Notes under the pieces: generated by a model
Database searches by the model: none
What the model saw: only the letters and a program-made list of their open reading frames with translations
Told to the model about the DNA's origin: nothing
In this document: piece by piece, positions 24,306-63,960 of the stretch
Position numbering within the stretch: the stretch's first letter is position 1
How the letters are laid out: the number at the start of each line of letters is the position of its first letter
Made by a program: the position numbers and the translations under genes
Source: Raja brachyura
Taxonomy: Eukaryota
Length of the DNA stretch: 64,000 nucleotides
Assembly (NCBI GenBank): GCA_963514005.1
Contig: OY740795.1
Location: 1 to 64,000, forward strand
Reading direction: 5' to 3'

Positions 24306-26095
24306 ATGCACGCGCCAGGAAACGGACCAATCTTCGCCACATATTATACAATCCTTGCTGTCTTCGGTGTGCCAGATAAAGCTTGGCAAGAGTTGATAAA
24401 TACGTAACAGTGTCCATGATAAACTGTCATGTTCCGCGCTGGCCGCCTTACTCTTCGGTTCTGCACCACAATTTTCCTTAATTGGTTCCTTATCGTTGCT
24501 CTTAAAACTGCGAATTTTACATGGAGCAGCTTTGGTACGGATGTTACTTATTAAATTCAGTCTTTAGATTATTACAATAATTTGTTTTATGGAATAACCT
24601 CTTTTCACAGTTGTTTCGAAGTTCCCCTTATGTCTTAGTAATGTTGCAAATATAATTTATTGGCGATTTCAGTTTCGTTCATGAAACTCCACATATCCTG
24701 TTCCAATATGTCTTCCTTGCCTTGCTTAAAATTGTCCTGTCAATGTTAATATGTAAGTACATTCGGTTATAAATTAACCTTGTCGTGTATGAAGATAGAC
24801 AAGTGAAGTCGATTTGTTTGCTGTTTGCATAAGTGTGACGAGATTGGTAAAATCGTTAAAAGCGTCCTTGCCAGAGCATAACAGGCTGCTCGCACAAATA
24901 TACATAACACGTAAATAATACCAGGCAGTGAAATTCTAAAGACTGCGCAAAACCATGCAGTCCAAAACACAATTCGAAAACATGTCCATCGTAGTGCACG
25001 CGATCGGCAGTACAGCTTGGTTTCGCGTGGCCATTTGATATCAGAAATAGATAACCAGCAAACCAATAACCGCTTCACGCTCTGTATTCGTTGCAACGAT
25101 ATGGGATTGCACGTCAGCTCCCAAAAGCCAGTTATGGAGCGGGCGCCGATAAATATTATATACATAATCCCACTCTTTTCCTTGCAGCTAACGTGCTGAC
25201 GATTGCGATTCTGTCGCAGGGAAAGTGCGGCCTCTCGAAATGCATCACTCGGTACCTGGTATTCATGGCGGTGACGGATTTCCTGGTCATCATCACTGCT
25301 GTGATATTCAGCCGTCTTCGGGCGATTTATTTCCCAGTTAGTATCTTGTCCACTACGCCGGGTTGCAGTCTGATCATTGCGCTCAGCTCCGCTTCTAAAG
25401 ATGCTTCCGTTTGGTTAACGGTCGCTTTCACCTTAGATCGGTTTGTAGCGATTTGCTGCCAACAATTGAAACTGAGGTATTGCACCGAGAAAACCGCGGC
25501 CGTTGTTATAGGAACCGTGTGCTCCCTCGCCTGTTTGAGAAACGTCCCATTTTATTTTGAATTTGAACCGATGTACATTATCGACACAGTGCCCTGGTTT
25601 TGCAGCATAAAAGATATATTTTATACCTCCGTCGCTTGGAGAGTGTATGAATGGTCGCACCGGATGTTAAACCCATGCGTTCCTTTCCTCCTGATTTTGA
25701 TACTCAATGTTCTGACGGTCAGATACATCCTTGCCGCCAGCAGAGCCCGCGGTAGACTTCGGAGCCAAAACAACGGAGAGAAACAGAGTGACCCAGAGAT
25801 GCAGAGCAGGAGAAAGTCCATAATTTTGCTCTTCGCCATCTCGGGCTGTTTTATTCTGCTCTGGGCGACCGACGTTGCAAATTTTCTATTTGTCCAAATT
25901 ACAGTGAATAACTATGTCAGCGCCTCTAATTCCAATGACCCGAAGTTCATCTTTCAAGAAGGCGGATATATGTTGCAGTTTCTCAGTTCCTGCACCAACA
26001 CATTTATCTATGCGGGGACTCAGACTAAATTCAGACAGCAGCTGAGAACAACTATTCAATACCCTTTCAACATAATTAGACAACGGTTCAAATAA
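24306..26095 (+). CDS. GPR139-like class A GPCR, copy 1 (exon 1 24306-24375, exon 2 25188-26095); exon-1 donor is AT
   Basis: Exon 1 MHAPGNGPIFATYYTILAVFGVP, then ttgcag|CT AAC into a 7TM exon with TDFL, TLDRFVAIC, PWFC and SSCTNTFIY. Exon 2 is open. The donor reads G|ATAAAG where paralogues have G|GTAAAG or G|GTGAAG. Confidence 0.88.
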
Positions 26096-26415
26096 TAGTC
26101 AAGACAAATACAATTTTGCGAAGGGTTCATAAAGGAAAGGATATTTTCAGTCCACATTAGAATTAACGATGATCGGGTCAATTGCGTGTCATTGTTTGTA
26201 ATATTATTATCACGTTGTTGGAAGTAACTGTTGAAACTTTGGGGAAACAGATAAGAGGTTATATCTTCGGGGAAGGAAGTTGCGAAATAAAATTCCGTCA
26301 ACTCGACTTTCTCTGTTGATAGTTTCGACAAATATGAGCGTGGTTGGTCAGAGGAGCATTTAATCAACGCCCTTATTTGGCTTTGAATAAAGGAGTTTCT
26401 AATTCATTTCGAATT

Positions 26416-26600
26416 NNNNNNNNNNNNNNNNNNNNNNNNNNNNNNNNNNNNNNNNNNNNNNNNNNNNNNNNNNNNNNNNNNNNNNNNNNNNNNNNNNNNN
26501 NNNNNNNNNNNNNNNNNNNNNNNNNNNNNNNNNNNNNNNNNNNNNNNNNNNNNNNNNNNNNNNNNNNNNNNNNNNNNNNNNNNNNNNNNNNNNNNNNNNN
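26416..26600. other. Assembly gap (185 N)
   Basis: Run of n. Confidence 1.
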
Positions 26601-27465
26601 ATTGCGTGAGCGCAGAAGTCATTGCGCAAATGCTGTCATTGGCCAATGCGATGGAAGTGGAATGCGATTGAGATGGAATCATTGGCCAATGCTTCCACCT
26701 CAATTTCTCATAAAATGCATCAAACTCTCCAGTTTCGACATAAAAATCGACAAAACGTACTTTGCCCGCGATCGTGGTCTCTTTAAATTTTGACAAAAAT
26801 AATTGTAATATCTATTTGGAAAAATCCAAACGAAAATTCAAATATACCCACTACCATAATACAAAAAAACCCACATATTAAATAGCTCTTTCCCCATCCT
26901 TAGTGAGGATACATTCCATCCCCCGCGGTGCCCAGCATTCCCGTTGATCATGTTCTCTTATGGATTGTCTTGAGGGCGTGAGCAGAAGCCGTCTGCCGTG
27001 TAATTGAGATAGAATTCTAGTGGATTGCGTTTGCTGCCGTCCTCAGTTCGCGATTGGTCTTATCCTTCAACGTTATTCCTGGCACAATATGTTGATCAAA
27101 ATACATTATTCATCTCACGATGTCCCTGCTTACTGTCGTACTTACTTCCACTCTTCATACAGACGGGTTTCGAAATAGACAAGAGTCCGTCGGAGACTAT
27201 AAAGATCTTTAGATAAATCAGCATGTCAATGCAAAAATATTTTTTTGTCAGTTAGTATAATTCCATAACGGAATATGAAGATGTTGAACATTGGGCACAA
27301 CAGCGTTCGCACAAATTCACATGTTGAAAGCAATCCCATTCACCCAACTCTTTGTCACACTTTATTCCAAGCGAACAAGAACCCTTTCCTTCCTATTTCT
27401 CCAAAATGTGTCCGTTTTGTCTAAGAGCGCTCGCTGGCGAACGCTCATGGGGATCACAGCGGGTA

Positions 27466-27504
27466 GGTTTTTTTTCGAGCCTGTTGCATTTCTGCAACAG
27501 TGTG
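27466..27504 (-). promoter_or_regulatory. Recombination signal sequence, 23-bp spacer
   Basis: CACACTG + 23 nt + AAAAAAACC on the minus strand. Confidence 0.8.
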
Positions 27505-27988
27505 GGTCTCATGGCGCAGATGTACATGGCGGAATCGGACATCACGGTGTCGCGTATCATGAACTCGGTCATCTTCGCAGCTTTATTAAAGTTAGCAGAG
27601 AGGCGATCGGTCACGTCCGTGTTCCTTAATATCTTATTTCCCAGAACCTGAAGCAGGTACTGTGGAGCTTGAGCTGGGCGCTGTTTGTACCAGAAAACAT
27701 ATGGCGTTGTATCACTGGTTTTCAGACCACAGGTTAGTGTGACATTCATTCCCACTTCAAACGACATTCTGCTTCGGATTGTTCCAATGTATTTTGATGG
27801 CTCGAATCTAAGAGAAAATATTGAACATGGCACAATTAACGTAATTGCGTGAAGCTGCATAGGCATTAACCTTCCACTATCAACAATTAGGTTACAACTT
27901 TCATTGCAAGATAGGATGTTTTACGTGCAAGAAATATCTTACTGAGAAGTGTCAAGATAATGAACAGCGGAAGGAAGTGCCCGACAAT
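27505..27988 (-). pseudogene. TRAV: TCR alpha/delta-type V, probable pseudogene (leader 27943-27988, V exon 27505-27807)
   Basis: VTLTCGLKT..WYKQRP..DSAMYICAMRP. A 1-nt deletion in FR1 relative to the 29834 paralogue puts the splice acceptor out of frame. The leader has ATT where the paralogue has ATG. Confidence 0.85.
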
Positions 27989-29794: not shown

Positions 29795-29833
29795 GGATTT
29801 TGTTCGAACCCGCTGCACTTTTGCACCAGTGTG
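29795..29833 (-). promoter_or_regulatory. Recombination signal sequence, 23-bp spacer
   Basis: CACACTG + 23 nt + ACAAAATCC on the minus strand. Confidence 0.88.
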
Positions 29834-30310
29834 TATCGCATGGCACAGATGTACAGGGCGGAATCGGAGAACACGCCGTCACGTATAACGAACTCGCCCA
29901 TCTTTGCAGTTTTATTGAATGTAGCAGAGTATCGATCTGTGATGCCCTTCGCCCTGTATACGTTATTTCCTATAACCTGAATCAGGTACTGCGGAGCATG
30001 TCCAATGCACTGTTTGTACCAGTAAACATATGGGAGTGTATCGCTCGTTTTCAATAGGCACTTGAGTGTTACATCCGTTCCCTCTGCAAACGTGGTTTCT
30101 CCTTCGGTCTGTTCCACCGTATCTTGATGGCTCCAGTCTAAGAGAAAATAGAAATGGTCAGAATCATAACGATTGAAGCGGCATCGGCATTATCTTTACA
30201 TCAGCAGAAATCAGGTGACGACATTCGAGGGAAGACAGGATTTTTACTGGATGGAAATCCTTACTGATAAGCGCCACGATAACGAAGATCGGGAGGCGGT
30301 GTTTACACAT
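29834..30310 (-). CDS. TRAV: TCR alpha/delta-type V gene, apparently intact (leader 30265-30310, V exon 29834-30137)
   Basis: MCKHRLPIFVIVALI-A|GTAAG...ttag|AC gives NWSHQDTVEQ..VTLKC..WYKQ..DSALYICAMR, followed by a 23-RSS. Confidence 0.9.
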
Positions 30311-33147: not shown

Positions 33148-33187
33148 AAGTCCAACATAAGTATTTCAGTACGTCTTTCCAAAGAAA

Positions 33188-35804
33188 ATGCACGCGCCTG
33201 GAAATGCACCATTCTTTGCCGTTTACTACACTACTCTTGCGGCGTTTGGCTTACCAGGTAAAGGAATAGCGGAAACCTAAGTTAAACCGTGTTACATCCA
33301 GTTACAGGTCCCTCGTTAGAACAGTTAGATACGTTTATTTATTGTCACGTACAGTGAAAAGGTTTGTTAATTTGAAAATTACTTTTCCTTTCACCTGTCT
33401 TACTTTTTAATAGAAGCCCATATTCTCCGATTTTTGCTCGCTTCGACAGTTTAATGGGTACAATCTAGTGTCTGAATACGGAGAATGCATTCAATTATAC
33501 TAGCAGTTTTCAGGTTGACATTCGTTCGATTTGTTCTGTTGGTAACAAAAGCAGGCATTGTAATCTGCACTTATTTGAATGGCATCATTGCCGCCAGCGC
33601 TGCATATGCAGTCTTCGTGCTTTAAACGAATTTTCTGTATCAGACTCCGCATGTCTGTGAAGGGAGGAACAGCAAATGCTGGTTTAAACCAAAGACTGGC
33701 ACAAAAAGCTGGAGTAAGTAAGCCTGCCAGAGAGCATCTCTGGAGAAAGGGAATGTGTGACGTTTCCGGTCGAGACCCTTATTCACATTTTTAAAATAAC
33801 TCCGTTTGTATTTTTTTTATATAAAGCAGCTTCCATATGTTCATTTTCCTGTAAGATGTGAAACTGATGCCGGCCCGCTTCTTTGCGTCCAGAATCCGAT
33901 GGGGTCATTATATGCCAAGCGGGATAATTATCTCCGGCAAAGTCAACCTCTCCCCACAAAAATCGGAAAGTAACTTAATCCGTATCTGTATTTGAGTTTA
34001 GTGCATTCTCCCGTGTACCGAGACACCGGGAAAACATTTACTGGTATTAATATATTATAGGCATTGATATATGATTGCCTTGTCCGGAGATACAGTGGAA
34101 GAATTTGTGATGCAAGATATGCAGGCAACTCATACCATTCAAAAGTGTGCTCATGAGAAAAAAAATAGCAGAGTGCAGAGTATTGTGTTGCAAAGACTGA
34201 GAGAGTGCAAATAGAAAAGTGTTTGGCAATGGAGAATGCTTTAATGTTCGGTGCCGTTTGGTGTCTGGGAGAACGCGCCGGAATTCCACCTCCACTCTTC
34301 GGTCTGGTTCAATTTTGTATCAGAACGTGTTTTTTTTTATAATCGGAATACTCATTGTATGAATGAAGTTTGCCTATATTTTTATCTTATGCCTCGATAG
34401 GTCATGGCAAATTTAGGCAGCTATTAGGTAGGCCTATTTATCATCAGATACATTTATTCATGTTTGTCTTTGGTTACCTGGGTAAGGTTCCACTGTTTGC
34501 TTTCAAATGTATGTATTTTCCCAATTTACTATTATTTACATGTTTTTTTATTCCATTTCTTCCATTCTAAACCATAGACATTTCAAATCAAAGAATACTA
34601 TGTTGAGGTACGTGGCAACGTTTGCATTCGTTGTGGTCATTTTAACTGATACACGCTTCAAGCAGCGTCTCTGAAGGACGTGGAGAGGCGAACGTTTCGC
34701 GACGGGACACTTTTTTTATCTGAGTGTAGGGATAAGAGGAAGCTGAAAAGGAGATTGGGAGAGCAGAAAACTCGCGAGTGTTATTTTCAACGACAGTAAA
34801 TTTCACCAGGACTGAATTTCGTTTCTACGTTCGTATAAACTGGCGACGCGGCCGGAATTATGATGAATAACTCCATCGTATTTCTCTTTGTTTCACAGCC
34901 AATATGGTGACGATCGCGATTCTCTCCCAGGGAAGATGCGGCCTTTCCAAATGCATCACACGCTACCTGGTGTTTATGGCGGTGTCGGATCTCCTGGTCA
35001 ATATCGCAGCCGTGATATTGAGCCGGCTCCGGCCTATTTATTTCCCTCTTAGTTTCTTGGCAACAAATCCGGCCTGTAGTGTCGTCATTGCAGTCAGCTG
35101 GGCTTGCAAAGACACGTCCGTCTGGTTAACTGTCGCGTTCACCTTCGATCGGTTCATCGTCATTTGCTGCCAGCGACTGAAACACGGTTATTGTACGGAG
35201 AAAACGGCGACTGCAGTTATTGGAGTAGTCTGCGCGCTTGTCTGTTTCAAAAACATACCGCTTTGCTTTGTTTATGAGCCCATGTATGTTATCGATAAGG
35301 TGCCCTGGTATTGCAGCATAAAATAAATATATTATACATCAACTTCCTGGCGAATGTATGACTGGCTGCATCGTATATTAAACCCATGTCTCCCTTTACT
35401 TCTGATTTTGCTACTAAACGCGCTGACAGTCAGGCATATCCTGGCGGCCAGTGGAGCCCGGAAGAGGCTCCGGGCCCAGGGCAATGGAGACAACCACAGA
35501 GACCCAGAGATGGAGAGCAGGAGGAAGTCCATCATTTTACTATTCGCCATCTCGGGTAGTTTCATGTTGCTGCGCCTGACGTTTGTTGTCAACTTTCTGT
35601 TTGTGCAGTTTTCAAGCAGTTTTCTATGCCAACAGTACCAATTCCACTGACCCGAGGTTTATTCTACAAGAAAGCGGATATATGCTGGAGCTTCTCAGTT
35701 CCTGCACCAACTCGTGTATTTATGCGGGTACGCAGACCAAATTCAGAGAGCAGTTGAAAAATGCGGTCACATACCCCTTCAAGCTGACTAACAAAATCAA
35801 GTAA
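33188..35804 (+). pseudogene. GPR139-like GPCR copy 2, pseudogene (exon 1 33188-33257, exon 2 34899-35804)
   Basis: Exon 1 MHAPGNAPFFAVYYTTLAAFGLP G|GT. Exon 2 has an in-frame TAA at 35324-35326 and a frameshift near 35620. Confidence 0.9.
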
Positions 35805-37526
35805 GGGGCAAGACCATCAATGTCCACCCTGCATCTCACGGTAATTGTAAAAATAAATGGTACAACTTTTAATTCCTATGCAGGCTGCTCATTCACATAC
35901 TGTATTTAGGTTAGGTCCGTTTTCGGTTCATGTGTGCTATCTGCAGTAAACCTGCCGATGATATAGCCTTGTGGCAATAATACCGGGTACGAAATAAGCG
36001 TTAGACTCTGACAGTACAAAGTTGCAAAATAAAGTCGTCCTAGATTTCAGATTTATCTGTGTGTTATTTGAGAATTATTCGTAAGAACCCATCTGCTGTC
36101 CATAATTAACTTCCCTGAATTGACTGGTTCCCTGACTCAGAGGGCAACTAAAATTCCGCCGAATTGCTCGCGCTTAAGTCGCGTGTTAAGATAAACGTAG
36201 CGAGGCAGTGGGTGTCCTCGTTGGCGAGGTTCATTGGTCCAGACTATGGTGACATGGATCCGAAGAACAGCATGGAGCTTGCGCTGGACATTTACATCAG
36301 CGCCACCGCAAAGGCTCGCTTAAGCCTGGAACCCAGCATTAAGTGAGAGGCATTGATAATCTTCTTTGTAAAACGGGCTGGATACATTCCATATCCTCTT
36401 CATCAGCGTGACTGGGTTAAGCAGAATTATGCTCGTCAAATCTAAGAAGTTAACTGCCTCATTTAAAATGTCTAACGATGTTGTGAAATAATGAACATCA
36501 ATGTAACTAATTTTCATCAAGTCGCCCTTCTAAAATGTTGACAAATTTATGGTGTTTATACTGAAAATATTTGTAAATGCAGTACACTGTTAGGACGTTG
36601 ATAGAATCGTATTTCCAAAAATAAACTGAACTCAGACTGAAACTCAATGTTGAAACTTTATGTAAAAACCTATATAACCTTGAGGAGAAATGGGTAATGA
36701 GACAATCAATTTCTTTCCGAGACTTAGACACGGTTAACCAATTAACCGTGGCATTGCATATGTTTTGCCTCTGGACAGCAGGGGCTATACATTTCCAACA
36801 CGATACAATGCAACAATTCGCATCCTTGTATCACACACACCCCAACCAAACAATGCGCCATTATGGCCTCCACCCTTCTGGAGTTCATTTGTTGTCGGCC
36901 TTGACTTTTTTCTGGCATTTTCTCCACGCCAAGTAATTTTCACTCCGCCTACTTTTACATTCAAACTCAAGAAGCGTTCAGACACGAAACGTCATGTCTT
37001 AATTTTCTCTAGAGATGCTGCACACCCACATTTTGTTTCTATCTTTAATATAAACCAGCATGATACAAATCTGGTATTCAGATAGCAGCGTTGTTACAAA
37101 ACCCTACAGTGGCGCTGCAGATTTTCCCACTGCCTGTGCGTGCGATTCCGGAGGCTGTTTGCGGGATGGGCGGATTAAAACGCGGGTTTGTATTGGTTGT
37201 CGCAGAAGAATTTGCTCAGACTTCAAGCTGATGAAGAAAAATCGATCTGCCTTCTCCGTCCCGTTTTTAAAAAAAAATATGCTGGTCGATTCAAGTTAAA
37301 CGCGACTTCTAACGCCTTCAACGCCTTCAACATCACGGATCGCAAGTGCAGGACAAAACAAATGGAATGTCGTTATTTAACATCTTTTCTTGCTTTTTGA
37401 TGCGGTCTCATTTTAATCTGATGATGCGAAAAATGTAATTTAGGCCCCGATACTATATCGGCCGTGTCTTGCCTGCCGATATGGGTCTTAAATCATACAT
37501 TTTGCGGTCATATTCCGATCGATCAC

Positions 37527-41662: not shown

Positions 41663-44242
41663 CTATTTTAACCGCTTACGAATTAGATAGAAGGGATACT
41701 TAACCACTTCCTGCAACTGCTCTCTAAACTTAGTCTGTGTCCCCCCGTAAATACACGAGTTGGTGCAAGAACTGAGTATCTCCAGCATGTATCCACTTTC
41801 TTGGAGAATAAACTTGGGGTCATTGGAATTGGTACGGGTTGCATAACCACTGCTTGTAATTTGTACAAAGAGAAAGTTTGCGACGTATGTCAAGCGCAAC
41901 AGCATAAAACTGCCAGAGATCGCCATGAGTAAAATGATAGACTTCCGCCGACTCTCCATTTCGGGGTCACTCTGATTTCCACCTTTGGTCTGGGCCCGGA
42001 GCCTCTTGCGGGCTGCACTGACAGCTAGAATGTGTCTGACCGTCAGAACATTGAGCAACAGAATTAGTAGGAACGGGAGGCATGGGTTCAAAACGCGGTG
42101 TAGACAATCATATACTATCCATGCAATTGAAGTGTAGTACGAATCTTTTATGGTGCAAAACCAGGGTACATTATCAATTATGTAGACTGGGTCATATATA
42201 AAATAAAATGGGACATTCTTCAAACAGCCTAATGCGCAGACCATTGCAACAACACCCGCCGCGATTTTCTCGGTGCAATATATTAGTTTCAGTTTCTGAC
42301 AGCAAATGGCGATGAATCGATCAAAGGTGAAAGCGACCGTCAACCAGACGGAAGTGTCTTTTGAAATCCAGCTGAGGACAATAAGGACCTTGCAGGTCGG
42401 AATGGTAGAAAGGACTGTGGTCGGGAAATAAATTGCCCGAAGCCGGCTTAAGATCACGGCGGTGATGATGACCAAGAAATCCATCACCGCCATGGACACC
42501 AGGTAGCGAGTGATACATTTGGAGAGGCCGCATCTTCCTTTGGAGAGAATCGCAATCGTCACCAAATTCGCTGCAGGACAGAGGGAGAGACCGGGTTATT
42601 AATAATAATTAGCTTCGCCGCTGGAAAATGGAACGCATTCTAGCTTTGCTGGCTGATCCAGTCTATTCATTCATTGAATAGTGGCTGATATATCTTTACT
42701 TTCCAACCTCATTCACCTGCCTTCTCCTCATAACCATTGACACACATACTCTTCCGAAATGTGTCGACGTCCGCCTTAAATTTGCCCAATGACTTGAGCT
42801 CCACACAAAAGCGATAAAGTAATTCCAATTTCGCGCGTATAATGAACTGATTCTCTTCATGCGTGTGATATGAGACCCATTATCGCATAACAAATGGATC
42901 ATCTAATACACCAGCAAACAGTCCATGGAATGTAACCAGTTTACATGAAAACACACAATGGAGATAGATGTTTTATTGTAAAAAAAACTACCACAGCGAT
43001 TGAGAGTCACGGAGAAATCTGACAGAGCTTCATCTTAACGAATCCTTCCAAGCGTCATCGAAACGACTCCTTCGAAGAAGGGCATGGCAGTGGCCCAAGA
43101 GGTCTCGCAAACGTTGGCAAATGTTTCAAGATATTTTCCATCTCATGTTTTGTCCTTCAGCTGATATCAGAGCTACGTCGTGGAAAGAGGCCTTTCATCC
43201 TACCAACGACGTCAACCACCGATCACCCGTTCACAAATGCCGCATTTATGGTTAAGATTACAGTCACAATATCTGTAATAGTTATCATATTTTAATCAAA
43301 ATACAAAATAAAGAAAATACACTGGAAAACAAAGAGTGTTGGAGTAACACAGCGCGTCAGGCAGCATCTTTGGTGAGTAAGGGAGAATGAATCGGCGACA
43401 TTTTGGGTCGGGAACCATCTTCAGACCTTCCACCTACCTTGCAAAAATAGGAGTTCCTCCTATTTTTGCAAGAATGTCATCCCTTGTTCTCGAATACCGC
43501 CGCATCTGCTTCCACGCCGAGGCATTACACTCTAGATTATCCAGAATGTCCTTTATTCAGCGAACGTAGCTCCCCATGCTGTCGCGGGTGGATCCCTCGC
43601 CCATGTGTCATCTCTGTCCTTGTTTTGCTTTTCGCATCCCTGACGCCACCCCAGGCAGCTTAGTGGAAACATTATCTTGGTCGATGCAGAAGCCTGAACA
43701 AGGGTTCAGAACCTGACCCGATGCGTTGCCTATTCATTACCTCCACAGATGCTGCTGACTAGCTAAATCACTCCGGCACTTTAAGTTTTGCTGCATGATT
43801 CCAGTATTTACAGCCCCTTGTATCTCCAAAGAAAATATACAGGATAAAAGTAATTTAAGAATAAACATTAGACGTCAAAATGTTTGACTGTAACGCGACG
43901 TTGAACTAAAAGTGCCTGCCTTGCACCAAACGCTGTGTGCATCAGAGAATATATTTAAATCAGCCGCTCCGCCTTCAGAAACTGGCTAAGTAATATATAA
44001 TGAAATTAACATCGTGACATAAAATGGTTAAATCTAAGGAATACACTTTGTCGTCGTAATGCTCGGTAGGCAGCTGGAAAGGAATAATGAGAAATATATC
44101 GAAAAATCAAAATACTCAGCAACGAACGGTTACACGTTAATTTTCCACGTTTAGACTATCTTCACTCTTCACCTGGAACGCCGAAAGCAGCAAGGGCAGA
44201 ATAATAAATAGCGAAGACAGGTCCATTCCCAGGCGCGTGCAT
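41663..44242 (-). CDS. GPR139-like class A GPCR copy 3, intact, 325 aa (exon 1 44173-44242, exon 2 41663-42570)
   Basis: MHAPGNGPVFAIYYSALAAFGVP G|GTGAAG ... ctgcag|CG AAT TTG. Open 7TM exon with MDFL, TFDRFIAIC, PWFC and SSCTNSCIY. TM1 resembles GPR139 [22 protein letters not shown] (recalled from memory). Confidence 0.92.
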
Positions 44243-50113: not shown

Positions 50114-50144
<31 letters not shown>

Positions 50145-50159: not shown

Positions 50160-50203
<44 letters not shown>

Positions 50204-50782
50204 GCGGGCGTAGAAACGCCCTCAGTCTGATGAGAAGTCCCCATGTACTCTTTCATTCACATTAAGTGAGGATCAGGAGGTATTGTCTGGTGGCTGGTTC
50301 CAAGCTGGAATTCAGCTGATGTGGGACCTTGTTGTCCATTGATGTGGGCTCATACGCGGCTGTTATAATGCTCAGATATATTTTGAACGTAGACATATGA
50401 GAATGAGGATATTATTCAGTGTACGGGTGGCACAGCGATATTGTCTGGTTTAATGTCGTTCCGGCCTCTTGCAAGGTATTGTCAGGGGGGATTCCGTTTC
50501 ACAGACAACGGTTGCAACCGCAGTAAGCGAAGGTGGCGACGTTGAGGTGCGCTGCAACTACACGGCTACGAGCACACAAGTTGCGTATCTGTACTGGTAC
50601 CGTCAATATGTCGATGGACCCATGGAATTTATGCTCTGGATAAGCAAGTACAGTTCAAGCCCGGAAAATTCACCGGGTCGACACTTTTCAACCTCTCTTG
50701 ATGATTCGGGACGGATCGTCCTATTCACAGTGTCGGAAGCACAACTGGAAGACTCGGAAGTGTATTATTGTGCCCTGAGCCC
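49987..50782 (+). CDS. TRAV: TCR alpha/delta V gene, apparently intact (leader 49987-50038, V exon 50476-50782)
   Basis: [18 protein letters not shown]|GTAAG; [39 protein letters not shown] is TRAV/DV-like; 23-RSS follows. Confidence 0.93.
50115..50200 (+). repeat. (CA)n microsatellite in the V leader intron
   Basis: Interrupted acacacac.. array. Confidence 0.9.
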
Positions 50783-50821
50783 CACGGCGTCTCGTTGCGG
50801 TGCTGAGCCTGTACAAAAACA
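50783..50821 (+). promoter_or_regulatory. Recombination signal sequence, 23-bp spacer
   Basis: CACGGCG + 23 nt + ACAAAAACA. Confidence 0.85.
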
Positions 50822-52079: not shown

Positions 52080-52986
52080 GGTAACAGGTTTATTATAAAA
52101 CCGCTGAAAGGTGGCTTCACTGGCCCATCCCGCTGTGGCAAGAATATGGTCCATGGGCACCTCCATGACCTTTGCCGGCGACGTTGATGCAGCCCTGGTG
52201 GAATGGGATTTAAAACATTAGTATCAAAACGATCCTGAGCCATCTGCAGATTGTCTGTACCGTCACTCTATGGTGAGTTTTTTTGTGGCTGATTAGCAGG
52301 TATTGCTCCATTCCCCTTAATTTCCGCGTCACTCTAATATAGTGGCGGATATGGGTGGCTAAACATAGCCTAGCATCAGCGGGGTATGCTGGAAACACCA
52401 GCTGCAGCCCTGTGAATCCAGGTCTATGCTGCTTAAGCAATTCATCAACGAAGAAAATAACCTTCTCTGGGGTAGAGATCATTCTGTCAATCTTGACCTT
52501 GTGAAGAGTCTGTATCCTTTGTGCCGAAGTAAGTGCCAATAACATCACCAGCTTCAGGGTGAGTTTGTTCAATTCAAGCCCAGCCATGGGCGACCACGTC
52601 CTGAGTAGGGTCAGTCCTTTCCCAATGTCCCAGGTGATGTTGTAACGGGGTCTTGGCGGGTTGGAATTAAATATTCCCCGCATCAGTTTGGACACCAGTT
52701 TATTGGATCCTACCTCAATATTGAGGTAGGATGATAGTGCACTCCTGGCGCTATTGATGGCACTGTAGCTGAGGTGTTCGTCATGGTGTAACCCCGCAAG
52801 GAATTCCAGCACATCTGTGATTGAAGCGGAGTCATATGCAATGTCCAAGCGGCCGCAGCAGGTTTCCCATTTTCTGATGTGCGATAAATATTGCCGTCTT
52901 GTGGACTCCCTGCATGACGCTCCCATTGTATCCATAGTCCTTGATGAGAGACCATACTGCAGTAATGGTCTGTTCAAATCCTGCAA
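52080..52986 (-). pseudogene. DIRS tyrosine recombinase, frameshifted near 52225
   Basis: LSYSAINSARSALS and LALTSAQR in ORF 52210-52986; the catalytic end (HSTRAAS..AGW..FQRFY) lies in another frame at 52080-52215. Confidence 0.85.
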
Positions 52987-54983
52987 GCCAATAAATTCAA
53001 GTGCCTATGGCAGGGATGTGGTTCCCCTGTAACAGGGTTCGTCACCAATTGTGGGCAACCCTCTAAGAGGACCCATGGTTGACTGATCATATCAAGGATC
53101 ACCGGATACCATGACTGAGTAGGCCAGTCGGGTATGATAAGAATGCCATTAGCAGCATCTAGCTGGATTTCACGCAATACCCGACTGATGAGGCAAAATG
53201 GCGGAAATGCATAGAAAAACCATTTCCCCCAATCTAGCGAGAAAGCGTCCATCGCCATTGCCCCAGGATCTGGTTCCCATGATACGTATGTTGGTACCTG
53301 ATGGTTCAACCGTGACGCAAAAAGGTCAATATCCGGTTTACCAAATTTGGCTGTAATTTTGGCGAATATTTGGGGATTCAACATCCACTCGATGTTGTCA
53401 TTAAATTTCCCTGACCTGGTGTTCGCCACTGTGTTGAGCTTACCTGGTAAATAGGTAGCTGAAATCCAAATATTCCGTTGTATGCACCAGAGCCAAATTG
53501 TATTAGCCAATTCATCACCTGAAATTGACCTGGTACCGCCCATATGATTTAGATATGCCACCGCAGTGGTGTTGTCTATTTGGAGACGGACATGAGTGTC
53601 AGTAATGTTTGAACAATAAGCTCTAAGTCCGTGGAATGCCCCTAGCATCTCCAAATAGTTTATCCCTTGTGCTAACAAAAGGGTAGATTCAAGTGAGTCC
53701 CATCTGCCCCCACAACTAGTGTTGTTGTCCGTAGCTCCCCAGCCATGGGAGCTTGCTTCTGTTTGTAAGTATACCACCGGACGAGGCACAATGATGGGTT
53801 TGAATGAGTTATGGATATTGTCAATCCACCATTGTAACTCAATTTTTGCCTTAAGTGGCAGCTGCATAGGTCTATCAAAATGTCCATCATTCAATATTAA
53901 CGCTGAAATCTTGGATCTTTGTAAATTTTGATAATGTAAAGGTCCGAATTGAGCAGCTGGAAAAACTGCTACGATTTTCCCCATTACCTTAGCAGTTTGT
54001 CTGATTGATGGTATACTGGCGCAGACCAGGTTCTTGAATGCTTGAAAGACATCCCCAACTTTGTTAGTTGGTATGGTGGCAATCATGCGATTGGAATCTA
54101 CCGTGAACGCCAGATAGTCCATGATCTGTGAAGGACAGAACTTTGATTTATCTGGATGGATAATAAATCCCATTTTTTGAAATATTTCCACAGTGGCTGA
54201 AACTGCCAATTTCGCTGACTCCGGTGTATGCCCAATAATTAGGATATCATCCAGAGAAGCCATGACCGTATGATTTTGCCTCCACAGTGTTACTAGCACT
54301 GGCTTGAGTAATTTAGTAAACAGTCTGGGGGCTGTGGTAAGCCCATTGGGCAAAGCTTTGTATTGCCAAAGTTGATCCATCCAGGTAAACTTCAAGAACT
54401 TCCTGTGATGTTTCTGAATGGATACTGAATAGTATGCATCTTTTAAATCAATGCATGCCATGAAGCAGCCCTCAGAAATCAAAGATTTGGCTGTTTCGAA
54501 CGTGTCCATTTTGAAATGGGTATATTTTACAAAAGTACTCAAATGGGTTAGATCTATAATGACCCGACATCCACCATCTTTTTGTTTTTTTATAAATATA
54601 TTAGATACAAATTCAATTGGTTCATGTGTAGTTCTTTCTATCACACCTTTCTCTTGTAGTCTCAATATTTCAGCATAGCCTACTGCTGTTTCCTTCCTGG
54701 AAAGTGCAAATTTGCGATTCGGCATATACCGAGGTGGAGGAATTTGGCCATTTATGAACTCAATCTCATAGCCCTGAATACTTTGTAAGATAAACTCATC
54801 TGAGGTGATGGTTTCCCATGCCTCCTTAAACCCCCGTAGTCTACCCCCAACATGTGAGGTTAGACATGCAAGTGCATGGAATCCAGACCGCCTTACCTTA
54901 ATGGTTATCGGTGGTCCCTGACGTGTTTGGTGGGACGTGGAGGTGCTGGCTTGCGCTGGTAATGTGGAAACCGCATTTTCCAT
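52974..54983 (-). CDS. DIRS pol: reverse transcriptase, RNase H and N6-adenine methyltransferase-like domain
   Basis: IDLKDAYY, LPNGLTTAPRLFTK, SLDD (normally YLDD), TEAS (normally TDAS), INYLEM, IDNTTAVAYLN, DLFAS and YAFPP. Confidence 0.9.
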   Translation of the reverse strand: MENAVSTLPAQASTSTSHQTRQGPPITIKVRRSGFHALACLTSHVGGRLRGFKEAWETITSDEFILQSIQGYEIEFINGQIPPPRYMPNRKFALSRKETAVGYAEILRLQEKGVIERTTHEPIEFVSNIFIKKQKDGGCRVIIDLTHLSTFVKYTHFKMDTFETAKSLISEGCFMACIDLKDAYYSVSIQKHHRKFLKFTWMDQLWQYKALPNGLTTAPRLFTKLLKPVLVTLWRQNHTVMASLDDILIIGHTPESAKLAVSATVEIFQKMGFIIHPDKSKFCPSQIMDYLAFTVDSNRMIATIPTNKVGDVFQAFKNLVCASIPSIRQTAKVMGKIVAVFPAAQFGPLHYQNLQRSKISALILNDGHFDRPMQLPLKAKIELQWWIDNIHNSFKPIIVPRPVVYLQTEASSHGWGATDNNTSCGGRWDSLESTLLLAQGINYLEMLGAFHGLRAYCSNITDTHVRLQIDNTTAVAYLNHMGGTRSISGDELANTIWLWCIQRNIWISATYLPGKLNTVANTRSGKFNDNIEWMLNPQIFAKITAKFGKPDIDLFASRLNHQVPTYVSWEPDPGAMAMDAFSLDWGKWFFYAFPPFCLISRVLREIQLDAANGILIIPDWPTQSWYPVILDMISQPWVLLEGCPQLVTNPVTGEPHPCHRHLNLLACRI

Positions 54984-56667
54984 GCTGGCCGTTGAAGGCC
55001 TAGCCCTAAAAAAGGCCTGGGCTGTTGAGGCTGTTGGTATAAAGGAGGTGCCGGAACGTAGGTCCTTGCTGGCCTTTCGGTTTGACCTCGTGGCCTGAAA
55101 AAAGGTGTTTTCTTGGCCGTTTGTCTGGTCAAGGTGTGTGACCTCATAAGACCCACTGTCTTGACATGGTCATCTAAATCTTTGACCTGCTTCGGGAGGT
55201 CTTCTCCGAATAGCTGTCTGGGTGGTGGTGTTGGAGGTGCTCTGCATAGCCCCGCAAATTTGGGGTTTAATGTAGGCTTGATGATGCTTTTCCTAAAAGC
55301 ATTGATCTCATATTGCGTATTGCAAAGTAGCGCCAGAGCATCCTCCTGTTCGGTGTTCAAGTCCACTCCATCCACCGACCTCGCAAACGCGGTAACCCCA
55401 GATGTGAGTAATTTCAGGATTCTTTGCAATTTTACTTCCTGAGCTCTAATGCCCGGGCTGATATTGCCCCAAATTGGCATGTTCACAATAGGCACATTGA
55501 GCGAGTTGCAATTACCCGGTGCCTTGTGTCTGTCCATGGCCTTCGCAAGGACCTCCTCCTGTAGCTGATGGTTGGTGGGAAATCTATGGTAGCAGCCAGC
55601 TTGGTATTGAGGGGTTGTCCCGATGATACGGGTAATCCAAACTTGGCTGCCACGTCCAGGAGCTCTTCCTGGGGAACCTCAGGTGCTACTGGAGCATGTA
55701 CCAAGATCTCCTCCTCTTCTGGCCTCATGCTATCCATGGATGATGGGGATATATCCATGAGTCCCCTGGAACTGTGTGTTTCCCGCCTTTGATTTTGCAG
55801 GACTTGTTCCAAAATCCCCTCCATCCGATCTATGCGCCCTTCATGGTGCGTGAATGGGCGGTCAGAGTCCTCATGCCCGAAGGAACTTCTGAGGCTCCTA
55901 TCATCGGCCCGTACCTCGTCGAGGTAATATCGGTGCCGTGACGATAAGTCGCTACCAACCGCCTCAGCGAAACTGAACGACTCCCGCGCGGATCTGCTCA
56001 TACGCCTTCTTTTGGCTGAGCTAAATCCGGCTGCCTCTGAGGGCATATGCGGTGAGAAGTCGGCACCCAACGCCGCAGCATCGTGACCCGACATCCGCGC
56101 GGGCTTGCCGACTGTCCTTTTTCTGGACCCAGACGGCGTACGGTCCCGTCCCGCCCCCAGCGGGGGAAGCGGTGACCGTGGCGAGATTCCACCTGTGTGA
56201 CTCCTCCTGGTCCAACTAGGTGGTGAGTCTCCACTGGCCCTTCCTGGCCTGCCAGTGGACTTGGGTCTCGCTGATTCACCAGGCCGCAATCTTGCGGCTC
56301 CTGGTGAAACCTCAGCCCGAAAAGGGCTAGGTTGTCGAGCTCTATCCCTGGCTCCTCCATGAGGGCTCAGGGAGAAGGGCCGTGCAGCAGCACGTGAACC
56401 CCGTTTGCTCGTCTCTGCCAACGATCCTGTTGGCGATAATGAAATGGAGTCAGGGTCTACCTGCTCCGGCGCTGTACCGACTTCTTGCTCTGCGGGAACA
56501 CCGCTAGTGCTCAGCTGTGTCGGTGATTCGGGTCCTGTGACTACAGGGCTCCCCGATTTGCGCGCCGTTTTCCCGGCCCGTCCAACGGGTGCTGTAGAAG
56601 GGAGCTCCGGGATAGGTGGCCGGCAACTCCTTCCGGATGTCCTGCGGCCCGTACTCCTCTTGTCCAT
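54905..56667 (-). pseudogene. DIRS gag-like ORF1, split by a frameshift near 55540
   Basis: ORFs 55483-56667 and 54905-55537 lie between the left ITR and pol, and overlap pol as in DIRS elements. Confidence 0.7.
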
Positions 56668-57670: not shown

Positions 57671-58700
57671 ATGCCACTCCTTGCACACGTTGCGCCGTGG
57701 CTGACAATGATCGTGAGTAGGAAGGCTGATATCTTAAACTAGTTCGCATTTTACTCTGGCTGATTCTGGCGCACTGCGAACACGCTAGAACCGGAACTGA
57801 GCGAGCGTGCGAAGCGCGGGGCAATTATAATCATTGTGAAATATTTACTGGGATACGATGTAATCCCACAAAGCGAGACGGACGATTTTCGAGAGAGGAG
57901 CACGAACAGAGCCCTTCCGACTGCGTGGATATTTGCATCAGTTGGGCAGTACTACGGCTGATTGCCGTTGAGGAACCGGTGTGAAGTTCCGCAAAAACAA
58001 TTTCATCGGTGTGCGAAGAATATGTGAATTCTTAGATGGAGTAAGTGAAGTGGATCACACATAGCTAATCAGTGGATCACTCATACCAAGAATGCGCTTG
58101 ATGGGATCAAGAAAGGAACGGCAGTCAAGCTGATCGAGTGGGGCATGGGAGGGTGTGGGGAAACGCGCATACATCGTCCTTTTGGAAGCAGTCTGAATAA
58201 GGGTCCCGACCTGAAACGTTGTATCTCATTTCCCTCCACATATACTTCATGACACACTCTGTGCATCCAGCACTTTGATATTTGCTCAAGATTCCAGCGT
58301 TTGCAGTTCCGTGTGCCGCGGTCCTTTCTGTTGTTTCGAATTCTGTTCTCTGTTCTGTCAACGTCAATGCGTTTAATCTACCCAATTATATTTAGTCCGA
58401 ACCTTTGAGATTAATTTCTTGTCTTTTGTTTACCCTTACTCCAGATCTGAGCACTGCCGATACATTGATACAGTGGGAGACCATCACAGCACGTCACTTT
58501 GCCAGCGGCTGCTTATTATATATTTTGGTATCGCCCGTACAGAGGCAGATGGCACAAACTGGAGATACCAGAGTGGCGGCTATATACGGCGAATTTCGCT
58601 AAAAGCAGATTTTCTGATGTGCTCCAACAATCGGTGTTGGAGTATCGATTGACTATTACACAACTGTCGTCTGACACGGAGATGTATTACGGTGCAGAGT
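57671..58700 (+). pseudogene. TRAV: TCR V pseudogene (leader 57671-57716, V exon from 58445)
   Basis: Leader MPLLAHVAPWLTMIV-A|GTAGG with ATTGGTGTTC at 57551. Exon has YIFWYRPY..FAKSRFSDVLQQS..SDTEMYYGA, with FR1 deletions, the second Cys changed to Gly and no clean RSS. Same family as the 9585 and 19992 V exons. Confidence 0.8.
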
Positions 58701-60204: not shown

Positions 60205-60572
60205 TATTGAATATGCTTTCCCCTTGCTCGTCTACAAAGCCCATTAAATCTCACCCCTCTCCTTTCAAAGGGCAACTTACTCCTGGTTTAAAATGCAGCC
60301 CTGCGCAGTTTTCATGTATGTTTTTTTGAAGAAGTTGCGCAACTCATTTTATATCTCGAGAATAGACACAACATGCTGTCAAAATCGCAGCGGGTCAGGC
60401 AGCCTCTCAGGAGAAAAAAAAATAGGTGACGTTTGGGGTCGAGACCCTTCTTCAGGCTGAGAGGGGCTCAGCATGAAGAAGCATTTTATACCAGGAGTAA
60501 GTTGCCGTTTGAAAGGACAGGGGTGAGATTTAATGGGCTTTATAGATGAGCAAGGGGAAAGCATATTTAATA
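60205..60572. repeat. 92-bp inverted repeat (60205-60296 and 60481-60572)
   Basis: tattgaatatgctttccccttgctc..cctggtttaaaatgc versus gcattttataccagg..gagcaaggggaaagcatatttaata. Confidence 0.88.
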
Positions 60573-60790
60573 CTTTGTACAGCCTGAAGAAGGTTTTCAA
60601 GCCGCAACACGTGGGTTTCCTGCAGAGTTACACTCAAGTTTGATCATACTACTTAGGTAATTCTGCTTCTTCTCAATCTGCCGCCAGGCCGCAGCTCTAG
60701 AGGGAAAGGAATGGCGAAGGGACTCGCCTTTAGACTGATTGCAGTAGGGTAACGGAAGATGGTGTTCAGGATAAAATGTTCCAGAGACGA

Positions 60791-60829
60791 GGTTTTTGTA
60801 CCGCGACCCCATTCATTGCGATCACTGTG
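60791..60829 (-). promoter_or_regulatory. Perfect-consensus RSS, 23-bp spacer
   Basis: CACAGTG + 23 nt + ACAAAAACC on the minus strand. Confidence 0.95.
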
Positions 60830-62008
60830 AACACCTGGATCGCACAATAGTGCAGCGCTGTGTCCCGCACTTTCGTCCTCCTTAGCGCCAAATAGCCTCG
60901 ATTTTCAGCAGAACTCAGCATGATCTCGTGTCGCCCTAGTACATTTGTATCGCTGAATGTCATGGTCAGGACGCGCTCCAGCCGCCCGTCACGACTCTCT
61001 ATAAACCAGTAGAATGCGGATATCACCGATGCATTGAAAACACAATTGAACTGCGCCGCATCTCCTGGATTGACCGTAAGCGAGGCGGGAGACTGAAGCA
61101 CCTCGTCCGCAAGGGCACCTGCTGAGGAAACAGTATTATGAACAGAGGTAGAAAGCTAACGAATGAACCTAACTTCACAAAAACAAATGTTAATCTATAA
61201 CGGTCGACAAACAGTCATAGAACACGTCCCGAAGAACCGTAAAGTGAATTAAACAATTAGAACAAATTCCACATCATGACTTCACCGATATTTTCCCTCG
61301 TGAATAGATGAATGTGTTTCTTGTAAGTCAAGTAAATGTTGCATTTCTATATATACCGCTGAATTCGTGACAAAAGAAAAAAATCACAAGTGTTCAATGG
61401 TCCAATGGATGTATTCGAATGGCAGAGCCCACAATGATCCATTGTTAGCTGTGGTCGAGGTCATACTAAAGGTGATACAAATAGTGAAGCTAGCAAGACG
61501 ACTAGAATGGGGGAGGAACGGAGAGAGAGGGAATGCAACGGTTACTTGGAATTAGATATATCAATATTCATACCACAGGGTGGTGAGCTGCCCAATCTGA
61601 TAAAGGAGATGCTGTTACTCGAGTTAGTTTCAGGCCACATTCTAACAGTAGAGGAGGCTCAGGACAGAAAGGTCAGTAAGTGATGGGAAGGCAGGTTAAA
61701 ATGTATGGCAACTGCGAGCTTAGGCAAAGGCGGACTGCTCTCTATCCCCGGCAATTCTGTGTGACTCCTCAAACAGCATCGTGAAAATCCACCACCTGTC
61801 AGAGCTGAAAGGTCAATGGCAACAAAAGCATTTCGAATACTACCAGCTGGCCGTTGCCCTCCAAGCCACACGCCATCTCGATTTTAAAACGGATTGCCAT
61901 TCCTTTGTCGCTGCGTCGGAGTGTTTGCTATCAGGCGCGAGTATTGTAATATAGAAAGCAATACTCACAGTGCATAGGCAGTAACAGCAACTGTATTATT
62001 ATCACCAT
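60830..62008 (-). CDS. TRAV: TCR V gene of a divergent family, apparently intact (leader 61969-62008, V exon 60830-61118)
   Basis: MVIIIQLLLLPMH-T|GTGAGT joins cag|GT to give CALADEVLQSPASLTVNPGDAAQFNC..FYWF..DTALHYCAIQV; perfect RSS. Confidence 0.88.
61370..61720 (-). mobile_element. Penelope-like GIY-YIG endonuclease C-terminal fragment in the V intron
   Basis: AVAIHFNLPSH.. followed by degenerate LE*QHL..G..L..GMNI-like sequence. Confidence 0.6.
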
Positions 62009-62769
62009 GGTTCTTCACCGCGTACTACGCGAATGCGACTGGGTACATTCCCCCAAGCAACCTATTGCATTTTGGGTCGGCAAACGCATGCGTGGAAAGG
62101 GCCACGGACTCACACAATGCAGAACGTCTTTGCGAACAGTAACGTGGAAGAGGAGAACGTCAACGCAAAGGAAGGCGACTCTGAAGACGTACCTCCATAA
62201 TCCATGACGCTCAATAATTCCTAATGGAATTAAATGGACAATTATCTGGTTTAATCTCCGGTTTAGTCTAGTGTAATTTCATGCTGGGTGACCTCACTTC
62301 CGCGACAATCCCGAGCAATCCTCAATGTAGCTAAGCGGAAAAGAATTGCAACCTTTGCTGTTGCCCAGACCTTATTAGCTACCAGAAAACACTCTGTAAT
62401 AGATTTTGTAATTAATGTTCCCTCCTTTCTTGAGGCCTCTGATACGCAACACATTGTTTCTCTCTCCAGCAATATTAACTGCACTTTCAAGTACTCCCAA
62501 CATTTTATATTCTGTTTTAGCTTAGCAGCTTCCGAGCAGTTTATTTGCACGCGCAGCATGTCCGCTCTGACTTACTGACGTTCTTATTTGTCTTCCTGCT
62601 CGTTAGTTTCCGGGTTCTTCTTTAACAGGCACTGATTCATTGGCGGTGAAAATATAGTGTGTCCTAGTTCCATTCCGCGAGCCACGTGTGCAGAGGATGA
62701 ACGTTTCAAACCTTAATGAAATATGCGCTATTACCCGATTAGCATCAAGCGATGGAGAGACAGACCGAA

Positions 62770-63230
62770 GCTGCCGGGCCTGACATATGAGGAAAGAATG
62801 GGTCGACTGGGCTTGTATTCACTGGAATTTATAAGTACGAGAAAGGATCATACAAAAAATTATAAAATTCCTCCGAGATTGGACATCCTAGATAAGTTAA
62901 AAAATGGTCCCCATGTACGGGAAGTCCACAACCAGGGGTCACAGTTTAAGAATAAGGGTTAGGCCATTTAGGACTGAGATGAAGAAATACAATTCACCCA
63001 TAGAGTTGTGAATCTGTGGAATTCTCTGCCACAGAAGGCAGTGGAGGCCAATTCACTGAGTGTTTTCACGAGAGAGTTAAATTTAGCTCTTAGGGCTAAC
63101 GGAATCAAGGAATACGGAGGGGGGATCAGAAATGGCGTATTAATTTTCAATGATCACATTGAATAGCGGTACTGGCTTGAAGGGCCGAATGGCCGAATCC
63201 TGCATCTATTTTCTATATTTTTCTGTTTCT
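62770..63230 (+). mobile_element. CR1 3' fragment
   Basis: LPGLTYEERMGRLGLYSLEF and the typical 3' UTR. Confidence 0.85.
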
Positions 63231-63450
63231 TTGACATCTAAGCATAAAAAATACTAGCAGCAGCATCGAACAACTCAACGGGTCGGGTAGCATCTGTGGA
63301 GGGTATGGACAATAGATATATAGAACTCTTCGTCGGCCTCTGTTTCCCTCAGTATTTAAATGTATGCATTTCATGCCAGGCTCTCGATGCTTTGGTATTA
63401 TCGGCGGTGGACAGTGTACTAACTATCAATTATCTTCTTCCCTCCTGCAA

Positions 63451-63960
63451 CTAACCTGGTTACAATTGCGGTTATCTCTAAAGGAAGGCGCAGCCTTGCG
63501 AAAGGTGTCACACTGTATTTGGTCTTAGTGCCGGTGGCGAATTTGTTTGGTCATTAACACCGCTGTGATATGAAGGCGGCTTCGGACGATTTATTTGCCA
63601 TTGTGTCTTGTCTACCACTCCATCCTGCAGTCTAGTTTTTAACCTGATGCTGGCTTTCCAAAGATACTTATGCATGGTTAACAGTTGAAATCACCTTAGA
63701 TCAGTTCATTGTCATTTGCTGCCAGAAGCTGAATAGTAGATATTGCACATAGAAGACGTCACCCATCGTTATAGGAAAAGTTTGAAAAATATTCCCTGGT
63801 ACTTTGAATACGAGCCCATGTAGCTCATTGATAACATGCCTTGGTTCTGCGGCTTGAAAGAAGCCAATGACACTCTAATTGCACGGAGAGTGGATGAATG
63901 GTCACACTGGATGTTGAACCCATGCGTTCCCTTGGTGATGCTTCTGATCCTAAACAGAAC
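63451..63960 (+). pseudogene. GPR139-like GPCR copy 4, decayed exon 2
   Basis: NLVTIAVISKGRRSLAKGVTLYLV..TLDQFIVICCQKLNSRYCT*..PWFC..EWSHWMLNPCVP. Acceptor reads tgcaa; several stops and frameshifts. Confidence 0.85.

What the first reader, a model, noticed from the sequence alone, without database searches (positions are those of the whole stretch)
24306..63960. GPR139-like orphan GPCR family interleaved with TCR V segments
Seen in the sequence: four paralogous two-exon GPCR genes (24306 +, 33188 +, 44242 -, 63451 +) alternate with RSS-bearing TCR V genes. They show the same mix of intact and dead copies as the V genes. Established knowledge: passenger families are known in mammalian TCR loci (olfactory receptors at TRA/TRD, trypsinogens in TRB), and cartilaginous fish genomes carry many genes auto-annotated as 'probable GPR139'. 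I do not know of a description of this family inside a TCR V array. Inference: these receptors are physically subject to V(D)J deletion or inversion and to TCR enhancers, so they could be clonally variable, lymphocyte-expressed sensors. Alternatively they are a chemoreceptor-like array hitch-hiking with the V genes.
Basis: partly seen in the sequence, partly recalled or inferred. Interest (0 to 1): 0.8.

Follow-up and report, generated by a model that had tools for sequence, protein, structure and literature searches.

The report
Orphan receptor genes among skate TCR V genes
In a skate genome, four copies (one clearly intact, one doubtful, two dead) of a shark-and-ray-specific receptor family distantly related to GPR139 lie between T-cell-receptor V gene segments, much as smell-receptor genes lie among mammalian TRAV genes, and nothing yet links them to T cells.

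Summary
Four GPR139-related class-A GPCR paralogues lie among seven V-set segments, five of them with good 23-RSS.

- **Copy states:** c3 is intact. c1 has an intact reading frame, but its exon-1 splice donor reads AT, not GT. c2 and c4 are pseudogenes.
- **Assembly gap:** it lies 320 nt 3' of the c1 stop, outside every coding region. The interleaving does not depend on it.
- **Phylogeny:** all four copies fall in one fully supported subclade. It has shark and ray members, and in each chromosome-level assembly with several members they share one contig. The wider family is spread over several chromosomes.
- **Selection:** c1 versus c3 gives dN/dS 0.16 with dS about 1.2, so these are old, constrained duplicates.
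- **Relation to GPR139:** human GPR139 is the nearest solved receptor, at only about 27% identity. Most GPR139 ligand-contact residues differ.
- **Expression:** no RNA run holds the gene, so lymphoid expression is untested.

Best reading: a passenger receptor family inside the TCR alpha/delta V array, like OR genes among mammalian TRAV. This scan had already noted the same arrangement on other DNA of this genome.

The parts
24306..24375 (+). c1 exon 1 (23 codons plus 1 nt). The donor reads AT at 24376-24377 where GT is expected.
25188..26095 (+). c1 exon 2, open frame to the stop. 95% identical to Leucoraja erinacea P0013.
26416..26600 (.). Assembly gap (N), 320 nt 3' of the c1 stop and outside all coding sequence.
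33188..33257 (+). c2 exon 1, with a GT donor.
34899..35804 (+). c2 exon 2, a pseudogene. It has an in-frame stop near 35324 and a frameshift near 35615-35625. 90% identical to Amblyraja radiata P0002.
41663..42570 (-). c3 exon 2, intact.
44173..44242 (-). c3 exon 1, with a GT donor.
63447..63973 (+). c4, a decayed GPCR pseudogene with stops and a frameshift. No exon 1 was found. It ends near the window end.
9605..9927 (+). V-set segment with 23-RSS (CACAGTA / ACAATAACT).
20012..20330 (+). V-set segment with 23-RSS (CACAGTG / ACAATAACT). Its best PDB matches are antibody V domains.
27466..27866 (-). V-set segment with 23-RSS. Tandem pair with the V segment at 29795-30117.
29795..30117 (-). V-set segment with 23-RSS. 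Its best PDB matches are TCR alpha and V-delta-1.
50469..50821 (+). V-set segment with a weakened RSS (CACGGCG, 23-nt spacer, ACAAAAACA).
58499..58700 (+). Dead V relic: Cys replaced by Gly in the YYC motif, no RSS, no Pfam hit.
60791..61101 (-). V-set segment with a perfect 23-RSS. Its best PDB matches are antibody VH-type domains.

Best explanation
These are germline members of a very large receptor family specific to cartilaginous fish. The family is class A and its nearest known relatives are GPR139 and GPR142.

One old subfamily, marked by the N-terminus MHAPGNGP, sits inside the skate TCR alpha/delta V array as a passenger. It evolves by birth and death alongside the V segments. In this window c3 is intact, c1 is doubtful, and c2 and c4 are dead.

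The intact copies most likely work as ordinary seven-helix sensors of small molecules or peptides, read out through G proteins in some non-T-cell tissue. A chemosensory or neuroendocrine role is my inference.

The only consequence of their position is collateral. In T cells that use a more distal V segment in the same orientation, the intervening receptor genes would be excised. With oppositely oriented V segments they would be inverted.

Shown here: gene structure, copy states, interleaving, purifying selection, subclade membership, and GPR139 as the nearest solved receptor.

Inferred: ligand type, tissue of expression, the absence of a T-cell role, and somatic deletion.
For: - Four paralogues and seven V segments are confirmed in the window.
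- The two-exon model matches annotated N-termini.
- The word search found more than 2000 relatives, and all 118 named hits among the best 120 are from sharks and rays.
- Outside the subclade, top hits lie on several different contigs per species, for example four in Heterodontus.
- All window copies fall in one subclade with 100/100 support. Its members share one contig in each of Amblyraja, Pristis and Heterodontus.
- c1 versus c3 gives dN/dS 0.156 and dS 1.2.
- The three exon-2 differences in a second individual are all synonymous.
- The class-A hallmarks N1.50, D2.50, the TM3-ECL2 cysteines, DR, P5.50 and N..Y are invariant across 25 family members.
- The paralogues share no flanking similarity with each other, so this window shows no recent V-GPCR co-duplication.
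- Mammals offer a precedent: OR genes are interspersed with TRAV (PMC2275272).
- The catshark has very few OR, TAAR and ORA genes (PMC11979771). That leaves room for another chemoreceptor family.
Against: - There are no expression data at all. No RNA run holds c3.
- The catshark paper found no GPCR among the 50 genes most specific to its 'brain & olfactory epithelium' library. That does not help a chemosensory reading.
- A subclade confined to one locus in both sharks and rays could mean the position is retained for a reason.
- The tools did not show that this locus is TCR alpha/delta in other species.
- c1 has lost its canonical donor, and half the copies are dead.
Confidence: 0.6

Rival explanations
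1. Lymphocyte sensors tied to the TCR locus. The receptors would be expressed in thymocytes or T cells under TCR-locus chromatin or enhancers. V(D)J deletion or inversion would make their gene dose clonally variable.
For: - They lie between RSS-bearing V segments of both orientations.
- The subclade is monophyletic and sits on one contig per species.
- Earlier scan notes report the same interleaving over about 1 Mb of this genome.
Against: - No RNA evidence exists.
- The wider family occurs on other chromosomes.
- The mammalian OR-TRAV and trypsinogen-TRB precedents are passengers.
- Orientation relative to the V segments is mixed, and no promoter or flanking sequence is shared.
Confidence: 0.07
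2. A decaying relic array. The copies in the V array would be non-functional leftovers of a family whose working members lie elsewhere. On this view the open frames of c1 and c3 are not maintained.
For: - c2 and c4 are dead.
- The c1 donor reads AT where GT is expected.
- W6.48 is replaced by R in c2 and c3.
Against: - dN/dS is 0.156 over a dS of 1.2.
- c1 is 95% identical to an annotated Leucoraja gene, and c3 is 95% identical to a Logan-derived protein.
- The R6.48 variant is kept in intact annotated genes of three batoid species.
- The exon differences within the species are all synonymous.
Confidence: 0.12
3. Assembly artefact. The interleaving would come from misjoined repeats or from the scaffold gap.
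For: One N gap lies between c1 and the next V segment. Leucoraja relatives sit on small unplaced scaffolds, so the region is hard to assemble.
Against: - c2, c3 and c4 and four V segments lie on unbroken sequence to the right of the gap.
- V 20012 and c1 lie on unbroken sequence to its left.
- Contigs from three DNA runs in two studies cover c3, including a single 1.8-kb contig across exon 2, the intron and almost up to exon 1.
Confidence: 0.02

Closest known systems
Human GPR139 (and its sister GPR142), aromatic-amino-acid-sensing class-A orphan receptors
   Same: - It is the best match among all solved structures.
- Both genes have two exons.
- The G-[LV]-P-A-N-x-[LV]-T motif of TM1 is shared, as read from the alignment.
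- The His at 5x43 is kept in c1 and c3.
   Different: - Identity is only about 27% over TM1-TM5. True GPR139 is 70% identical between human and zebrafish.
- F109 (3x33) is S in c1 and W in c3.
- N271 (7x38) is Y.
- W241 (6x48) is R in c2 and c3.
- The family has hundreds of copies, whereas GPR139 is a single conserved gene.
- The N-terminus is very short.
Olfactory receptor genes interspersed with TRAV at the 5' end of mammalian TRA/TRD; trypsinogen genes inside TRB
   Same: An unrelated multigene family lies between rearranging V segments and shows copy-number change and pseudogenes.
   Different: - The receptor family is different. The Pfam scan (E up to 0.01) listed 7tm_1 and no other receptor family for c1-c3.
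- The interleaving runs deep inside the array, not only at its edge. The scan's unchecked earlier notes suggest it extends over about 1 Mb.
Vertebrate chemoreceptor multigene families (OR, TAAR, T2R, V1R/ORA)
   Same: Lineage-specific expansion, tandem arrays, few introns, and birth-and-death evolution with many pseudogenes.
   Different: No evidence of expression in sensory neurons. The extracellular loop motifs VPW[FY]C and NDPKF are conserved across the family.

Membership tests
Class A (rhodopsin-type) GPCR, Pfam 7tm_1 | A Pfam 7tm_1 match above the gathering score. | tested here: met
   c1 scores 66.8 bits and c3 55.1 bits against a cut-off of 30.5. The c2 fragment scores 27.3 bits.
Class A (rhodopsin-type) GPCR, Pfam 7tm_1 | Microswitch residues: N1.50, D2.50, the TM3-ECL2 cysteine pair, D/ERY, CWxP, P5.50 and NPxxY. 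| tested here: inconclusive
   N, D, both cysteines, DR(F), P5.50 and N..Y are invariant in 25 sequences. CWxP is degenerate: W, R or Y at 6.48, and T at 6.50.
GPR139/GPR142 subfamily | GPR139 is the nearest characterised receptor. | tested here: met
   In the PDB profile search GPR139 scores E 4.3e-17 (65 bits). The next hit, TRH receptor, scores 2e-10. With the single sequence, GPR139 is the only hit at E below 1e-5.
GPR139/GPR142 subfamily | A two-exon gene. | tested here: met
   Exon 1 (70 nt) and exon 2 are separated by a phase-1 intron of 0.8-1.6 kb. GPR139 has two exons (PMC7318219). The exact intron position in human GPR139 was not checked.
GPR139 orthologue | High conservation; human and zebrafish GPR139 are 70% identical. 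| tested here: not met
   Identity to human GPR139 is about 27% over the 170 aligned residues (my count of the alignment).
GPR139 orthologue | The agonist-contact residues F109 (3x33), H187 (5x43), W241 (6x48) and N271 (7x38) (PMC5430874). | tested here: not met
   Read from the alignment. At 3x33, c1 has S and c3 has W. At 5x43 both have H. At 6x48, c1 has W and c3 has R. At 7x38 both have Y.
Passenger gene family inside an antigen-receptor locus | Non-TCR genes lie between RSS-bearing V segments. | tested here: met
   V segments with 23-RSS flank c1, the c2-c3 pair and c4 on unbroken sequence.
Passenger gene family inside an antigen-receptor locus | The locus is TCR alpha/delta, with D-J-C in cis. 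| not testable with these tools
   The window holds no J or C. Only unchecked earlier notes place NAR-TCR cassettes and a delta D-J region 20-940 kb beyond the window end. One V pair matches TCR alpha/delta best.
Chemosensory receptor family | Expression in sensory neurons. | not testable with these tools
   No RNA run holds the gene.
Olfactory receptor family (Pfam 7tm_4) | A match to the OR family profile. | tested here: not met
   At E up to 0.01 the Pfam scan listed 7tm_1 for c1-c3 (plus a sub-threshold TMEM169 match for c1) and no OR-family profile.

The most novel reading that the evidence does not exclude
One GPR139-related subfamily has stayed inside the TCR alpha/delta V array since before sharks and rays split. 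It is kept there because the locus controls it. The receptors would be expressed in thymocytes or T cells under TCR-locus chromatin, and V(D)J recombination would delete or invert them clone by clone. T cells would then carry a second, somatically variable receptor set.
Probability: 0.07. Interest if true: 0.85.

Novelty: new member of a known kind. Interest (0 to 1): 0.42.

Why it matters
Passenger gene families inside antigen-receptor loci are known from mammals. This is a separate case in the oldest living lineage of jawed vertebrates, and it involves a different receptor family.

It flags a very large receptor expansion in cartilaginous fish that databases label only as "probable GPR139". 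I found no paper on it. These animals have very few classical smell receptors, so the family is a candidate for missing chemoreceptors.

If the subfamily proves to sit among TCR V genes in sharks as well as rays, it would be a useful marker for tracing the history of the TCR alpha/delta and IgH complex.

Any link to T-cell biology remains speculative.

Tried and rejected
- **V-segment word search.** This was meant to link V genes to the same contigs in other species. It found no candidate, probably because V segments are not in protein sets.
- **Expression.** The one run search returned only DNA-like runs. Laying them showed contigs running through the intron. This shows presence, not expression.
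- **Papers.** Searches for GPR139 with shark, skate, TCR or expansion terms found no description. The 2025 paper on the elasmobranch TCR alpha/delta and IgH complex does not mention GPCRs, and its tables are not held. The catshark paper's supplements are not held either.
- **Stopped step.** I stopped that step and the analysis was not done.
- **Joined exons.** The joined exon 1 plus exon 2 protein was never built or searched.
- **Rejected: recent co-duplication of V-GPCR units in this window.** The paralogues are similar only across their exons.
- **Rejected: OR-family membership**.
- **Rejected: the gap interrupting a gene**.
- **First tree.** It used a wrong frame for c1. This was corrected.
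Full report
**What is in the window**

tblastn with the two long GPCR ORFs finds four loci and no more.
- c1: exon 2 at 25188-26095 (+).
- c2: exon 2 at 34899-35804 (+).
- c3: exon 2 at 42570-41663 (-).
- c4: 63447-63973 (+).

Pfam places c1 and c3 in 7tm_1, well above the cut-off.

Nucleotide comparison of the upstream regions shows a second conserved block of 70 nt at 24306, 33188 and 44242. The block starts with ATG and ends CCAG followed by GT in c2 and c3. A polypyrimidine tract and AG precede exon 2. The intron is phase 1 and 0.8-1.6 kb long.

The exon-1 peptides (MHAPGNGP.FA.YY....FG.P) match the N-termini of annotated relatives in skates, rays and sharks. Those N-termini run straight on into the exon-2 sequence ANLVTI.ILS.G.CGLSKC. 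The two-exon model is therefore sound. By arithmetic c3 encodes 325 codons.

**State of the copies**

- c3 is intact.
- c1 has an open frame, but its donor reads CCAG|AT. The Leucoraja orthologue P0013 is 95% identical and is annotated with the normal junction. c1 may be a young pseudogene, may use a cryptic donor, or the base may be an error.
- c2 has one in-frame stop and one frameshift.
- c4 has several stops and a frameshift, has no detectable exon 1, and ends near the window end.

**The V segments**

Seven V-type ORFs are present.
- Five have a 23-bp-spacer RSS directly 3' of the V exon.
- V 50469 has a weakened heptamer.
- V 58499 is dead.

One further RSS-like hit, at 61966 and away from any V segment, is at chance level.

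Against solved structures, the 27393/29731 pair matches TCR alpha and V-delta-1 best. The 20012 family and V 60766 match antibody V domains best. That fits the Ig-like V segments known in elasmobranch TCR delta loci (PMC12227049). There is no J or C in the window, so these are translocon-type V segments. V segments lie on both strands.

**The gap**

The N run at 26416-26600 begins 320 nt after the c1 stop codon. No GPCR or V similarity abuts it. The ORFs that cross it are artefacts of translating N. I could not test continuity across it.

The interleaving does not depend on it. V 20012 and c1 lie on unbroken sequence to its left. Four V segments and c2, c3 and c4 lie on unbroken sequence to its right.

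Contigs of three DNA runs from two studies cover c3. One is a single 1.8-kb contig running from exon 2 through the intron, ending about 40 nt short of exon 1.

**What the receptors are**

The word search found more than 2000 relatives. All 118 named hits among the best 120 are shark or ray proteins, nearly all auto-named "probable GPR139".

Against all solved structures, GPR139 is the only hit for c3 at E below 1e-5. With a 25-sequence profile it is the clear best hit: E 4e-17, against 2e-10 for the TRH receptor.

Identity to human GPR139 is only about 27% over TM1-TM5. True GPR139 is 70% identical between human and zebrafish (PMC7318219).

Mutagenesis showed four GPR139 residues to be highly important for activation (PMC5430874). 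Reading the alignment, their equivalents are:

| GPR139 residue | Position | c1 | c3 |
|---|---|---|---|
| F109 | 3x33 | S | W |
| H187 | 5x43 | H | H |
| W241 | 6x48 | W | R |
| N271 | 7x38 | Y | Y |

So this is a separate family related to GPR139, not GPR139 itself. Its ligands need not be aromatic amino acids.

Most class-A hallmarks are invariant across the family.

**History**

The paralogues are about 75% identical at the DNA level, and only over their exons. No flanks are shared.

c1 versus c3 gives dS 1.2 and dN/dS 0.156. These are old duplicates under purifying selection.

The three exon-2 differences in a second individual's DNA are all synonymous.

In a tree of 124 rows, and in a careful tree of 57 rows, the window copies fall in one subclade with 100/100 support. 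c4 was placed only in the 124-row tree, on a long branch. The subclade also holds genes of Heterodontus, Stegostoma, Scyliorhinus, Amblyraja, Leucoraja, Pristis, Mobula and Hypanus.

c1 groups with a Leucoraja gene and a Pristis gene. The c1/c3 split therefore predates the divergence of skates and sawfishes.

In each chromosome-level assembly with several subclade members, all of them share one contig: Amblyraja 59.9 Mb, Pristis 57.8 Mb, Heterodontus 59.5 Mb. The Leucoraja members sit on small unplaced scaffolds. Other subclades lie on further contigs, for example three more in Heterodontus.

The family is thus dispersed, but this subfamily looks bound to one locus. I could not show that this locus is TCR alpha/delta in the other species.

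**Function**

No RNA run holds the gene, so expression is unknown.

My best reading is a passenger family of ordinary germline receptors, probably sensors of small ligands. They would be excised or inverted in T cells as a side effect of V(D)J joining.

The mammalian parallels are documented. OR genes are interspersed with TRAV, and trypsinogen genes lie within TRB.

A chemosensory role is attractive because catsharks have only a handful of OR, TAAR and ORA genes. The same paper, however, saw no GPCR among the 50 genes most specific to its 'brain & olfactory epithelium' library.

**Earlier notes of this scan**

The same arrangement was already noted on other DNA of this genome. It was seen up to about 900 kb beyond this window and on another piece. 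NAR-TCR cassettes and a delta D-J region were also noted nearby. Two follow-ups reached the same verdict as mine. I used these notes as leads only.

**Limits**

- The joined exon model was not searched.

Noticed in passing
window 24376-24377: The c1 exon-1 splice donor reads AT where c2 and c3 have GT. The 95%-identical Leucoraja gene P0013 is annotated with the normal junction. An in-frame GT lies 9 nt upstream.
   Followed up: partly
c2 and c3 TM6 (c3 about 41880-41895); proteins P0002, P0004-6, P0010, P0012, P0015, P0024: The toggle-switch tryptophan W6.48 is an arginine in c2, c3 and eight annotated batoid genes of three species. It is a lysine in P0009. It stays W in c1 and in all shark members of the subclade. 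A buried charge at this position is unusual.
   Followed up: partly
window 52210-56667 (-): A DIRS-like retrotransposon with long open frames. They include a 669-aa reverse transcriptase ORF, a 258-aa ORF with a tyrosine-recombinase SAM-like domain, and a 394-aa ORF with no family match.
   Followed up: partly
window 20012-20330 (+) and 60791-61101 (-): These RSS-bearing V segments match antibody V domains better than TCR V domains in the PDB. This fits Ig-like V segments inside an elasmobranch TCR alpha/delta array.
   Followed up: partly
window 44464-44658; also 33733-33785, 60401-60455 and 37523-37821: A self-complementary stretch of about 195 bp lies 220-415 bp upstream of the c3 start codon. 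Related short repeats lie in the c2 intron and near V 60766. A second 300-bp palindrome lies at 37523-37821. These are probably MITE-like elements.
   Followed up: no
window 11943-13477 (+), 47463-49515 (+), 13547-15514 versus 21742-23727: LINE-type reverse-transcriptase fragments, plus a 2-kb repeat pair at 88% identity. The locus is rich in transposable elements.
   Followed up: no
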